DNA of 32,537 nucleotides from Ministeria vibrans ATCC 50519 (taxonomy: Eukaryota > Protista > Filasterea), in NCBI GenBank assembly GCA_943704425.1, contig CALSCP010000425.1, positions 74,917-107,453 on the forward strand. The letters run 5' to 3'. This document shows, piece after piece, positions 1 through 32,537 of this stretch. The notes beneath the pieces are model-generated. The model made no database searches, was not told the DNA's origin, and saw nothing but the letters and a program-made list of their open reading frames with translations. The translations under genes and the position numbers were made by a program. Positions within the stretch are counted from its first letter, which is position 1, and the number at the start of each line of letters is the position of its first letter.

Positions 1-54
1 GTGGGCCAATTGGATAAGTCGTATTGTTTTGACTGACGTTGGTTTGTTTTTTAG

Positions 55-2910
55 ACCAAGTCTCCTGCGTCTCGTCACTCGCATGCTCGTCCACGCCGTC
101 CAATGGAGTCTGCGAGTAGGTCAAGCAAGCGCCATTGCAAGTCCTTCCAGCAGCGCGACATGACTCTAGCGACCATTCCGAGCAGTGCTGTTGACACTCC
201 AGTCGAAAAAGGAAACTCCGCACCTGTGTTCGTCCTTGCCATCTCTCCACACGTCAATTCAGGAAAGTCAACTCTGTTGAACACTCTTGTTTCCGACGAC
301 ATTACTATTGGTCTCTCGTACATCTCCCTTCACGACCATCTTCCCCGAAAAATTGTTCCCACCCGTCTCTCGTCTGCTGGTAAAATCAAATAGTGCACTC
401 CAAACTTTTCGTCTCTCACAATCTCTCGCTCGTGTAGCCTCTTTGATTTCTCATGCTCAACTATTTTTAAACTCGGATTGTTGGACTGTACTGGTCGTCG
501 TCAATGCTCGTGCCCTCCGCAACAACTGCCAGTCTGATCTTGAATACGATGCCCTTGCCAGTCTGTGCCAGACCGTCTCCTCAGCCTGCAAGTGCCACCC
601 ACACGTCTTGAACTCGCGCGTCGTCCTTGTCGCCACCCACATTGACCTTTACCCCCTGCCCATCGAAGCGTCTTCTCGTCTGCGTGACGCTCTCCACCCC
701 ATTCTGCCGTTTCTAGTGCGTCCAATCGAAACGCTCGGAGCTGACGGTCTCTTCTTTCCCGTCAGCTGCATCACCGGTCAAGGAGTCGATACGCTCCGTC
801 ATGCTCTGCTTCAAACCCCCTCTTCTTCACTGAAATCACGCCATTTAGCGTCCGTTTCCGAGGCGCTTCGATGCGATACCGATTTACCCCTCATTTGCAC
901 CGTTTCGAATTTCACCGCATTGTGCAGCGCCCATGCTGCGTTTCAAAGAAATTCCCGAGGCGGAAGCAGTGTGCCGCTTGACGCACGGGTTCTTGTTGAG
1001 CACCAGGAACGCAGTCAGTGTGCCGTTGTGTGGCATGCCGACGGTCAAGGGCCACTGACTCTCTCCGATCTCATTGTTGTGCAACCCCGACGCCTCATCG
1101 CTGCACTTGATCTTCTCTACGCAACGGTTTTCGGGCTGGCACAGTCGCGCCATTGGTGGAACACGGCCATTGGCGCTGCGTTTGCTGTCAACGAAATGCG
1201 CACGAGCCGTCTCTTGTCCGACATGAAACACTATCAGCGCTGTCCCGAAGAGGGTCTCCCGCGCGAACTAGCCTGGCTTCTCTGGAGCGTCGCCCCACAC
1301 CTCCCTCAGGTGCAGCAGTGCTTCTTCCCCGACAAAAGCTGTCCTTCTGCCCTTTCCGACATCTTGAATCCTCTGACGCTGCTCAACTTTGTGTACACCC
1401 GTGGCGAGCGTCTCTTCGTGCCGCAGCTACTGCCCACCGACGCCCCGTTCCTCCGTGAGATTCCGCGCGCCAGCAGCATCCAACTGCTTCTCTATCGCAC
1501 CTGCGACTCCACCATTCTGCCTGTCTCGCGTGCACTATTTCATTGTGTTCTCGTGCAGCTCTGGCACGAACTCAACCCAAGCAGTGGTGTGCTTCGAGCG
1601 ACGCAGACGTCGTCGAGTCTCATGACGCTGCCCTTGACATCCTCGTCAACCACCACGCGCTCCGTCCAGGTGCGTCTGAGTCTGGACGAGTCCAGTGCCG
1701 CGCTTCGTCTCGAAGTGTACGCTTCAGAGGTCTCGGCGCGCTGCGTGCGCGACGTCATTACATTCATCACGGACCAGGTGTGTGTAGAGACACAGCATGT
1801 GCAGCACGGCTGGCACGGCCAAGTCCTCGCGGTGCCCGTGCACCCGCACGATCTCACCCAGCCTGTGTTTGACCCTGCTCACGTTGTGCGCGCTCCTGAA
1901 GACTATCGCCAGCGGGACCGAATTGAACGGGTGCTTTTGTCGCACTCTGCAACCCAATGTAACCACAACATTCTGCATTGGTGGTCTCGAGCAAGTAAGA
2001 AAAACAGAAAAAGACATTATTGTTATTAATTGTATTGCTTTTGTTTTTGTCTTGTTTTTTTTTTTTTTTGCTGCTGCGCTGCTGCATAGCTGTCGGAGCG
2101 TACAAACATGCATCTGCGCTGATTATAGGTGTGAGTCGGTATGCGGCTACGGGTAATCCGTGTCTGCAGGCACTGCCGGATCTTCCAGGGGTTCAGGCGA
2201 GTGCGAGACTGCTGGGTCGCCTGTACACCGAGCGCGAGTGGGCGACCGTGGGAGTGGTCGTGGATGACCCATATTTGGGAGAGAGTGAGGTTACGCGAAA
2301 ATATGTGCGTGGCGTGGTATCGCAAATGGCGCAGGAGATGCGAGCGAGAAAGGCTGATGAAAAGGACACGCTGCTGGTGGTGCATCTGCTGGGTCATGGT
2401 GATGGCAGTGGTGGACTGCTACTCAGCGACGCAGGTGAAGTCTCCGATGGAGGTGCTTCTACTGGTTCATTTGGTTTGGACGAGTTGCGTGAGCTGCTTG
2501 AGGATGAGACGGTGGGCTGGAAAGGCTGCAATGTGTTAGTCGTGAGCGATATTTGCGAGGGAGAGATGGTCGCACGTGTCTCGCGGGAGTCAGACGACAC
2601 GACTGAGGCTGTGCCTGGCTATGCGCGACAGTGCATGCACTCGTCGTTGTCCTTTGATACCTATTTGCAGCACAATAAGCGCTACACGCGAATGACTTCC
2701 CTCTGGTGGAGTGCGCTGCAGCAGCAGAGGGCCTTTCGCGTGGGTGAATCCCTTCTGAGTGCTGCAGAGCTGTGTCGTCGTCTGACGCTGATGGACCCGG
2801 CCTTTGAGGAACATCTAGCAATGAGCCGCATCTGGGACTCGTGGTTGTCTGGCGAGACCTCCAACGCTGGCGACATTCTACTTGACAGACCCGAAAAAGA
2901 AGAACAATAA
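55..2910 (+). CDS. Roc-COR GTPase-like protein fused to a C-terminal caspase/metacaspase-like (peptidase C14) domain; exons 55(or ATG 103)-379, 438-1994, 2090-2910; likely continues upstream of the window
   Basis: Roc motifs: P-loop-like VNSGKSTLL, G2-like ITIGL, HAQLFL, G4 VVLVATHID, G5 FPVSCITGQGVDTLR. COR-like motifs LIVVQPRRLI and LFVPQLLP. GT-AG introns 380-437 and 1995-2089 join ORFs 103/287/2020 in frame. Caspase motifs: ALIIGVSRY, LPDLPG, VVHLLGHG (His 2395-2397), VLVVSDIC (Cys 2554-2556). A branch-point-like CTGAC (33-37) and poly-T+AG acceptor (53-54) lie upstream, in frame with ATG 103. Confidence 0.8.
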
Positions 2911-31649: not shown

Positions 31650-32276
31650 GGGAACACATTAAGAGACAGAGAGTATCCTGTACCATATTATTAATAATAA
31701 CTATTGCAACTTATTCATGTGAACATAAAACAACCGAGTATAACGGTGATGGAATCGGCTGCTATGAGAACATAGCGGGAGGTGGAATTTTTGATTGTCG
31801 GATACCGCTTTTCGTTGATCGCCCGATCACTCGTGTTAGTGTTGAGTCCATTGCAGCGGAGTAATAAAGGACTCGCCCAATTTTCCTTTCAGATCTAGAG
31901 AGACATAAAAGACACTGTATTCACCGGCTGGCTTCGGACTGGCTTCTCCCACTCGAGCACACAAACACGATCGCTCTGTTGCGGCGACAGACACGTTGTC
32001 ATGCGCATTGATTCCGACAAACTGCCAGGTATCTCAACGGGCGGTGGGTTCTTGAGAGGCCGGCGGTGTGAGTGGCCGACCGAGCGTAAGAACAAAGCTG
32101 TTTGTTTGCGTTGTCGCTTGTTTTTTAAAAATGGGTTCTTCTTCTTCTTTATAACGTATTAAAATTCTGATTATAAACGAGTTCTTCTTTTCTTTTATAT
32201 AACATAATTAAAAATTATTATTATGAGTTAAAATAATTCTGATTGTGAGCGTGCGGACACCTTCACATTGTGAGGA

Positions 32277-32537
32277 CTATGGCGTCGGTGTGTGCGTGGA
32301 AGCCGATGTGGGAGCGCTGACGACGCCATTGTCGTCGCGGTACAGCAGAATGTCGCCCTCGTTGGGCGGCTCGTCCCAATCACTCCAGATGCGACCTGCA
32401 AGAAGTGCCTGCTTCATGTCGGCGGGGGCCATCGCCTGCAGTCGTCGTCGTAGGTCGCGCACAGAGATGACAGTCTCGCCGGGCGCAAACCCTTCGTGTG
32501 TCGGTCCCAGTGCGCGCACCAGAAGCTCCGTCAGCTG
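32277..32537 (-). CDS. 3' end of a gene running off the window; C-terminus paralogous to the caspase-like tail of gene 1
   Basis: Open frame from 32537 to the stop at 32277: QLTELLVRAL..GFAPGETVISVRDLRRRLQAMAPA..LLAGRIWSDW..NEGDILLYR, compared with gene 1 RMTSLWWSAL..AFRVGESLLSAAELCRRLTLMDPA..LAMSRIWDSW..NAGDILLDR. Confidence 0.8.
   Translation of the reverse strand, partial: QLTELLVRALGPTHEGFAPGETVISVRDLRRRLQAMAPADMKQALLAGRIWSDWDEPPNEGDILLYRDDNGVVSAPTSASTHTPTP

What the first reader, a model, noticed from the sequence alone, without database searches (positions are those of the whole stretch)
32277..32537. Second, divergent copy of the caspase-like C-terminus about 29 kb away on the opposite strand
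Seen: the truncated right-edge ORF aligns by eye with the last 70 or so residues of gene 1, sharing the pattern T.L...AL....F..GE...S...L.RRL..M.PA.....L...RIW..W....N.GDILL.R. The protein-level divergence indicates an old paralog rather than an assembly duplicate. Inference: there is a locally clustered family of caspase-like effectors with a distinctive RIWxxW...NxGDILL C-terminal signature. The second gene may carry a Roc-COR or a different sensor, the mix-and-match pattern typical of immune gene families.
Basis: partly seen in the sequence, partly recalled or inferred. Interest (0 to 1): 0.8.

Follow-up and report, generated by a model that had tools for sequence, protein, structure and literature searches.

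The report
Cut-off copy of Roco-caspase gene
The short reading frame at the right edge is the last 86 codons of one more member of a roughly 50-copy family of GTPase-switch-plus-caspase-like-protease genes, cut off by the end of the contig, and its "signature" tail is the final third of the protease fold, not an extra module.

Summary
The minus-strand frame at 32280-32537 aligns with the C-terminus of gene 1 (45% identity over 53 residues, E 4e-10; z about 15 against shuffles).

The frame is incomplete because contig C425 ends at window base 32537. It is 90-92% identical in protein to five paralogues elsewhere in this 29.7-Mb intron-bearing eukaryotic genome (81% and 85% to two more). The two complete, ungapped ones encode WD40 blades, a Roc-COR GTPase and a caspase-like last exon.

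A confident model of that exon matches MALT1, metacaspases and caspase-9 over its whole length (Z 18-19). So the tail is helices alpha4 and alpha5, strand beta6 (GRIW) and a closing strand (GDILL) of the caspase fold. The core of the motif also ends bacterial-type caspase domains; only the two tryptophans are family-specific.

Local clustering is weak: 6 close pairs against 2.5-4.1 expected. Mix-and-match has real support. One paralogue carries a Roc-COR part 97-100% identical to its neighbour, joined to a caspase exon only 45-65% identical.

The upstream part of this copy cannot be read. This scan has already reported the family several times on other DNA of the genome. This item adds one truncated member and an anatomy of the tail.

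The parts
32280..32537 (-). Last 86 codons of the final (caspase-like) exon of a Roco-caspase paralogue. The 5' part of the exon and the rest of the gene are missing because contig C425 ends at 32537.
   Evidence: Open frame. 90.7% protein identity to residues 207-292 of the complete C1443 exon. dN/dS 0.17-0.35 against the nearest paralogues.
32277..32279 (-). Stop codon (TAG), at the same place as in the closest paralogues.
32376..32396 (-). GRIWSDW: corresponds to strand beta6 of the caspase fold (residues 243-248 of the model of the closest complete paralogue).
   Evidence: Alignment A1; model secondary structure; DNA conserved at 79-81% even in distant paralogues.
32337..32363 (-). NEGDILLYR: turn plus closing beta-strand. 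N, G and D are invariant in the family.
   Evidence: The same G-D-hydrophobic ending occurs in bacterial-type caspase domains.
32412..32537 (-). Region corresponding to helix alpha4 (TELLVRALG), a short strand (ISV) and helix alpha5 (RDLRRRLQAM) of the caspase fold.
31854..32276 (-). 3' flank (probable 3' UTR and downstream DNA) shared at about 77% identity with the C1443 and C1080 copies. This marks a segmental duplication that included the flank.
   Evidence: blastn, window 31854-32537 against L009 and L010.
2090..2910 (+). Comparator: the caspase-like last exon of gene 1. Its tail, aligned to the right-edge copy, lies at 2734-2889. It is preceded by a phase-1 intron at 1995-2089, at the same position as in all paralogues examined.
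   Evidence: (PF00656, 25.5 bits). Exon borders are inferred from the conserved GTAAGA...AG; I have no RNA evidence.

Best explanation
The right-edge frame is the 3' end of the last exon of a further member of a roughly 50-copy gene family in this small eukaryotic genome. The assembly broke inside a repeated gene, so only the last 86 codons are present.

Family members encode, in one chain, a repeat sensor (WD40 blades in the closest complete copies), a Roc-COR (Roco, LRRK2-type) GTPase and a C-terminal caspase-like cysteine protease.

The conserved tail is the C-terminal third of that protease fold. It comprises helices alpha4 and alpha5, strand beta6 (GRIW) and a closing strand (GDILL).

Inferred mechanism (not shown): ligand binding by the sensor shifts the nucleotide and oligomer state of Roc-COR. 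That brings two protease domains together along the beta6 edge, which is the dimer interface in caspases and MALT1. The His-Cys dyad then becomes active. Cleavage is probably after basic residues, because the D-x-C motif is of the metacaspase/paracaspase type.
For: Shown for this copy:
- Significant homology to gene 1's tail.
- 90-92% protein and 92-94% DNA identity to five paralogues (81% and 85% protein to two more).
- Stop codon at the family position, and dN/dS 0.17-0.35.
- A 420-bp 3' flank shared with two complete copies.
- The contig ends at 32537.

Shown for the family:
- Every fetched locus that reaches far enough upstream (20 contigs, plus COR only on 4 more) has the order Roc exon, COR exon, short phase-1 intron, caspase exon.
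- PF00656 scores above its gathering cut-off.
- The caspase-exon model has pLDDT 87.5 and pTM 0.89. It aligns over residues 1-272 with MALT1 (Z 19.3), metacaspase 4 (Z 19.2) and caspase-9 (Z 18.0).
- His103 and Cys155 sit at the ends of strands beta3 and beta4 and are kept in all complete copies.
- The middle-exon model (pLDDT 86.3) has Roco proteins alone as its top 28 Foldseek hits (C. tepidum Roco E 3.5e-8, LRRK1, LRRK2, an isolated COR domain).
- WD40 (PF00400, E 2e-10 to 1e-7) is found on exon pieces upstream of Roc in the two closest complete copies.
Against: - Nothing upstream of residue 207 of this copy can be read, so its catalytic dyad, Roc-COR and sensor are inferred by proxy.
- Recombinant paralogues exist, so the proxy can mislead.
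- Pfam finds no COR and only a sub-threshold Roc.
- I obtained no RNA or protein evidence for this copy.
- The activation mechanism is pure inference.
Confidence: 0.8

Rival explanations
1. The fragment is a dead relic: a pseudogene remnant holding only the 3' end of the exon, and not a gene cut by the assembly.
For: The genome search lists several very short tail-only matches (C977, C1740 at both ends, C263, C2643:87181, C1887:18-110). The upstream part of this copy is unseen.
Against: - The frame is open for all 86 codons and stops at the family position.
- dN/dS is 0.17-0.35.
- The break coincides exactly with the contig end.
- Most of the short tail-only matches also sit within about 140 bases of contig ends. 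At least ten other contig-terminal copies likewise keep only the 3' part. This pattern points to assembly breaks in repeated DNA.
Confidence: 0.1
2. It is an allelic or assembly duplicate (haplotig) of another contig's copy, for example C1291 or C1441:102 kb.
For: 92-94% DNA identity to those copies. Both it and C1291 lie at contig ends.
Against: - 6-8% nucleotide divergence with dS 0.13-0.22.
- Homology with C1441 and C1291 stops 15-40 bases past the stop codon.
- The flank it does share (with C1443 and C1080) is only 77% identical.
- No contig overlaps the window end at 100% identity.
Confidence: 0.04
3. It is a family member with a different front end from its closest relatives: another sensor, or none, as a result of recombination.
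For: - L018 joins a Roc-COR part 97-100% identical to its neighbour L011 to a caspase exon only 45-65% identical.
- L027 has LRR and NB-ARC frames upstream.
- Gene 1 shows only about 60 codons (from the first Met) before its P-loop and no WD40 within the window.
Against: All complete members of the young subclade that could be read (C1443, C1080) have WD40-Roc-COR. The shared 3' flank ties this copy to those two.
Confidence: 0.15

Closest known systems
Bacterial LRR / AP-GTPase (Roc) / COR proteins with variable C-terminal effectors including caspase, predicted computationally by Kaur, Iyer, Burroughs and Aravind, eLife 2021 (PMC8195603)
   Same: [quoted passage not shown]
   Different: This family is eukaryotic and intron-bearing. 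The closest copies have WD40 instead of LRR. The family has about 50 paralogues. The caspase domain is only distantly related to any bacterial one (best E about 1e-11).
Metazoan and Dictyostelium Roco proteins (LRRK2, LRRK1, DAPK1) and the C. tepidum Roco protein
   Same: Roc-COR fold. The top 28 Foldseek hits are Roco proteins only. The profile's best PDB sequence hits are LRRK2 Roc domains (E 0.02-0.15).
   Different: The output domain is a caspase-like protease, not a kinase or death domain. The Pfam Roc match is below threshold and Pfam COR gives no match.
MALT1 paracaspase, metacaspases and bacterial orthocaspases (Peptidase C14, clan CD)
   Same: - Whole-domain structural match, Z 18-19.
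- His-Gly and D-x-C-x-S-G active-site motifs.
- The ending G-[KR]-I ... N/D-x-G-D-hydrophobic is shared with bacterial-type domains.
   Different: - The Pfam C14 model matches only the first 140 of its 233 positions.
- The two tail tryptophans (RIWxxW) are family-specific.
- The domain is fused in cis to a GTPase switch.
Apaf-1 apoptosome and NLR/STAND receptors
   Same: The same logic: repeat sensor, nucleotide switch, caspase output.
   Different: The switch is a Roc GTPase with COR, not a STAND ATPase. The protease is in the same chain and is not recruited through CARD. Analogy only.

Membership tests
Peptidase C14 / caspase-hemoglobinase fold | Alpha/beta caspase fold covering the whole domain, including the C-terminal (small-subunit-equivalent) part | tested here: met
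   Tested on the closest complete paralogue (L011:7064-7918, 92% identical to the fragment). Model pLDDT 87.5. VIA-align Z 19.3 with MALT1 (model residues 5-272) and Z 18.0 with caspase-9 (model 1-268 to chain 142-403). The fragment corresponds to model residues 200-285.
Peptidase C14 / caspase-hemoglobinase fold | Catalytic His and Cys at the ends of strands beta3 and beta4 | not testable with these tools
   For this copy the contig ends before those residues. In all complete paralogues examined H103 and C155 are present.
Peptidase C14 / caspase-hemoglobinase fold | Pfam PF00656 match above the gathering score | tested here: inconclusive
   The 86-residue fragment alone gives no Pfam hit. Complete paralogues score 27.9-40.8 bits and gene 1 scores 25.5 bits, against a cut-off of 21.4.
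True caspases (C14A) | P1-Asp specificity pocket (Arg/Gln/Arg) and QACxG motif | tested here: not met
   The active-site motif is D-F-C-N-S-G, of metacaspase/paracaspase type, in all copies. The specificity itself was not tested.
Roco proteins | Roc G domain directly followed by COR | tested here: met
   Tested on paralogue L009. A P-loop exon is followed by an exon whose model (pLDDT 86.3) aligns over 512-570 columns with C. tepidum Roco, LRRK1 and LRRK2, and with an isolated COR domain, 3dpt. Pfam Roc is only E 0.011 and Pfam COR gives no hit. For the right-edge copy itself this is not testable, because the sequence is missing.
WD40-Roc-COR-caspase paralogue family of this genome | Caspase-like last exon with the family tail, stop codon at the family position, and homology to other copies | tested here: met
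WD40-Roc-COR-caspase paralogue family of this genome | WD40 blades upstream of Roc | not testable with these tools
   Missing for this copy. Present in the closest complete copies, L009 and L010 (PF00400, E 2e-10 to 1e-7).
NLR / STAND receptors | NACHT or NB-ARC ATPase as the central switch | tested here: not met
   The central module is Roc-COR. NB-ARC was seen only in a frame upstream of one paralogue, L027.

The most novel reading that the evidence does not exclude
The family is a GTPase-switched repertoire of immune or cell-death receptors, analogous to NLRs, in a unicellular eukaryote. Earlier notes of this scan call the organism Ministeria vibrans, a close relative of animals; I did not test that. 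The repertoire is diversified by recombination that grafts sensor-switch modules onto different protease exons. The invariant tail is the beta6 interface through which proximity-induced dimerisation fires the protease.
Probability: 0.3. Interest if true: 0.75.

Novelty: new variant of a known kind. Interest (0 to 1): 0.42.

Why it matters
On its own this item is one more, truncated, member of a gene family that this scan has already reported several times on other DNA of the same genome.

What it adds:
1. The "signature" tail is explained. It is the conserved end of the caspase fold, with an ancient core shared with bacterial caspase-like domains.
2. There is direct evidence that paralogues exchange their Roc-COR parts by recombination at the border of the protease exon.
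3. The family is dispersed through the genome, not tightly clustered.

In the papers I could search, a Roc-COR switch joined to a caspase-like protease is only predicted, and only in bacteria (PMC8195603). If the eukaryotic family works as a receptor repertoire, it would be a third kind of nucleotide-switched death or immune receptor beside NLRs and the apoptosome.

Tried and rejected
Attempts to read beyond 32537:
- The contig ends there.
- No other contig overlaps the last 138 bases at 100% identity.
- A copy-specific 35-mer has no exact match in the JGI metagenome collection.

Family sampling:
Only about 25 of the roughly 50 loci were analysed in detail.
- The 1.5 kb upstream of gene 1 reads N.

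Searches with no result:
- Pfam on the fragment alone: no hit.
- Pfam on the 586-residue middle frame: no COR.
- phmmer against PDB sequences: nothing.
- Word search with the 896-residue open frame of L012, given unchanged by reference and scored on its caspase part: no hit.

Readings rejected:
- A trypanosomatid-like intronless gene array was my first impression from the long frames and pyrimidine tracts. I rejected it once conserved GTAAGA...AG introns were seen.
- The tail as an independent C-terminal domain.
- An assembly duplicate.

Every search and fold was run exon by exon, by reference.

Full report
**Observation.** The minus strand of window 32280-32537 is an open frame of 86 codons that ends at a TAG (32277-32279).
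- BLASTP against the frame that holds gene 1's caspase-like domain (2020-2910, +) aligns tail to tail: 24/53 identical, E 4e-10.
- The local alignment score is 96. For 2000 shuffles of the fragment it is 28.0 +/- 4.4, with a maximum of 57 (z 15.3).
- The frame is truncated because window base 32537 is the last base of contig C425 of a 29.7-Mb, 2860-contig assembly.

**What kind of genome.**
- Conserved short introns with GTAAGA donors and AG acceptors interrupt the genes, and a neighbouring pyruvate kinase gene is split. This is a small intron-bearing eukaryote.
- Earlier notes of this scan name it Ministeria vibrans. I did not test that.
- The contig is not human.

**A dispersed family.**
- A six-frame search of the genome with the complete caspase-like exon of a paralogue finds 65 matches, about 50 distinct loci on about 45 contigs.
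- The right-edge fragment is 90.7% identical in protein to residues 207-292 of the C1443 copy. Gene 1 is only about 41% identical to that copy.
- In a maximum-likelihood tree of 24 complete exons, gene 1 is the most divergent member (end branch 2.2). The copies most similar to the fragment (C1443, C1080, C985, C1441 at 102 kb) form a young, well-supported subclade.
- Against those copies the fragment shows 86-94% DNA identity, dS 0.13-0.37 and dN/dS 0.17-0.35. That is consistent with purifying selection and rules out an assembly duplicate.
- The 420 bases downstream of the stop codon are shared at about 77% identity with C1443 and C1080. Homology with C1441 and C1291 ends 15-40 bases after the stop.

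**Architecture by proxy.**
- The fetched loci that extend upstream (on 20 contigs) show a P-loop (Roc) exon, a roughly 560-codon exon and then the caspase-like last exon; four more contigs show the COR exon but no Roc match, and on C2637 (L031) only the caspase exon matched although 5 kb lie upstream.
- The last two exons are separated by a phase-1 intron, 57 nt in the closest copies. It lies at the same position in gene 1, where it is 95 nt long (window 1995-2089).
Each exon was searched and folded by reference.
- Roc-COR evidence:
  - Pfam sees only a sub-threshold Roc match and no COR.
  - A profile of 16 middle exons has LRRK2 Roc domains as its seven best PDB sequence hits, although weakly (E 0.02-0.15).
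  - The AlphaFold model of that exon (pLDDT 86.3, pTM 0.83) has Roco proteins alone as its top 28 Foldseek hits. These are C. tepidum LRR-Roc-COR (E 3.5e-8, 517 columns), LRRK1, LRRK2, M. barkeri Roco2 and an isolated COR domain.
  - The Roc-COR assignment is therefore met structurally.
- Sensor evidence: upstream of Roc, the two closest complete copies carry at least five one-blade exons that match WD40 (PF00400, E 2e-10 to 1e-7).
- The most likely full form of the right-edge gene is therefore WD40-Roc-COR-caspase. This is an inference by proxy.

**What the tail is.**
- The alignment of 28 caspase-like exons puts all ten invariant columns in the last 85 residues (T202, A208, L209, F216, L228, R248, W253, N258, G260, D261).
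- The model of the exon (pLDDT 87.5, pTM 0.89) is a single domain.
- VIA-align matches:
  - MALT1 paracaspase: Z 19.3, model residues 5-272.
  - Arabidopsis metacaspase 4: Z 19.2.
  - Caspase-9: Z 18.0, model 1-268 onto chain 142-403, so including the small-subunit region.
- The fragment corresponds to helix alpha4 (200-209), a short strand, helix alpha5 (225-235), strand beta6 (243-248, GRIW) and a closing strand (263-265, ILL).
- The "signature" is thus the C-terminal third of the caspase fold and not an appended module.
- His103 (in H-L-I-G-H-G) and Cys155 (in D-F-C-N-S-G) follow strands beta3 and beta4 and are present in all complete copies.
- The D-x-C-x-S-G form resembles metacaspases and paracaspases, not true caspases. 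That suggests cleavage after basic residues (inference from established knowledge of those families).

**Relatives outside the genome.**
- A word search with the exon finds 12 proteins, all on short metagenome contigs. Several are near-identical to copies of this genome.
- A profile search of 1.84 billion representatives finds 10 hits below 1e-30, all 137-415 residues long on short contigs (most under 300), then a gap to generic caspase-domain proteins at E 1e-11 and weaker.
- Those I scanned have bacterial-type architectures: TPR-caspase, STAND-kinase-caspase, caspase-nSTAND1-WD40 and CHAT-caspase. None has Roc-COR.
- Aligned with family members, several of them end with G-[KR]-I ... N/D-x-G-D-[FIV]-x-F.
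- So the core of the tail motif is old, and the two tryptophans are the family's own.
- In the literature I could search, LRR-Roc-COR proteins with a caspase in the effector position are predicted in bacteria (PMC8195603). I found no report of a eukaryotic one.

**Clustering and mix-and-match.**
- Six pairs of copies lie within 50 kb of each other (three on C1441, and one each on C883, C1339 and C425).
- Random placement predicts 4.1 pairs if contig ends are ignored, and about 2.5 if they are allowed for (P 0.23 and 0.04). The test is approximate, because only 24 contig lengths were known.
- The clustered copies belong to different clades. Local clustering is therefore weak.
- Recombination is clear. 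L018 (C1441 at 52 kb) is 97-100% identical in DNA to L011 (same contig, 50 kb away) through COR and the intron. It then drops to 45-65% about 40-80 bases into the caspase exon, where it instead resembles L025 and L020.
- One paralogue (L027, C2822) has long same-strand frames with LRR and Roc/NB-ARC matches upstream.
- Gene 1 shows about 60 codons between its first Met and its P-loop (about 76 in the open frame) and no WD40 in the window. The DNA upstream of the window reads N.

**Mechanism (inferred).**
- In caspases and MALT1 the beta6 edge is the dimer interface, and activation is by induced proximity.
- Roco proteins change oligomeric state with the nucleotide bound.
- I therefore propose that the sensor controls Roc-COR, which controls pairing of the protease domains through the invariant tail. 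None of this is shown.

**Verdict.** This is a real, truncated member of a Roco-caspase family. The scan has reported the family repeatedly on other DNA of this genome. Interest is moderate for this item, and higher for the family.

Noticed in passing
L018:1790-1830 (G000 C1441, about 52.4 kb), compared with L011 (C1441, about 102 kb): Recombinant paralogue. Roc, COR and the intron are 97-100% identical to a copy 50 kb away on the same contig. The caspase exon beyond its first 40-80 bases is only 45-65% identical to that copy and groups with another clade (L025, L020).
   Followed up: yes
L027:513-9876 (G000 C2822): Three long same-strand frames in a row: 1077 aa with LRR_8; 950 aa with weak Roc, NB-ARC and DUF7779; and 1044 aa with Roc-COR-caspase. 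This is either one giant Roco-plus-NLR-like gene or two adjacent receptor genes.
   Followed up: partly
Contig ends: C523, C1291, C304, C926, C2159, C1606, C1455, C977, C1740 (both ends), C1887:18-110, and the window end: At least eleven copies cut by contig ends all keep the 3' part of the caspase exon. None keeps only the 5' part. C1740 carries about 100 bases of tail-coding DNA, inverted, at both ends. This looks like assembly breaks at conserved or repeated family DNA.
   Followed up: partly
window 1-113: 100% identical to C1286:1-113 on the minus strand (C1286's first 113 bases, inverted); the match runs to the window's first base, so it may extend further into C425.
   Followed up: no
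window 55-390 (+): Gene 1 appears to start inside the window. There are about 60 codons between the first Met (about 76 in the open frame) and a P-loop that reads S-P-H-V-N-S-G-K-S-T, and no WD40 is visible. The 1.5 kb upstream reads N, so a sensor-less Roc-COR-caspase cannot be confirmed.
   Followed up: partly
P0001 (292 aa, on a 1581-bp contig): This public protein is 96% identical to L011. Its first 70 residues read like the C1443 copy and the rest like the C1441 copy. It may be another recombinant, or a paralogue absent from this assembly.
   Followed up: no
L011:867-2171 (G000 C1441): A pyruvate kinase gene split by introns lies directly upstream of a Roco-caspase copy. Long runs of N occur between them.
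   Followed up: no
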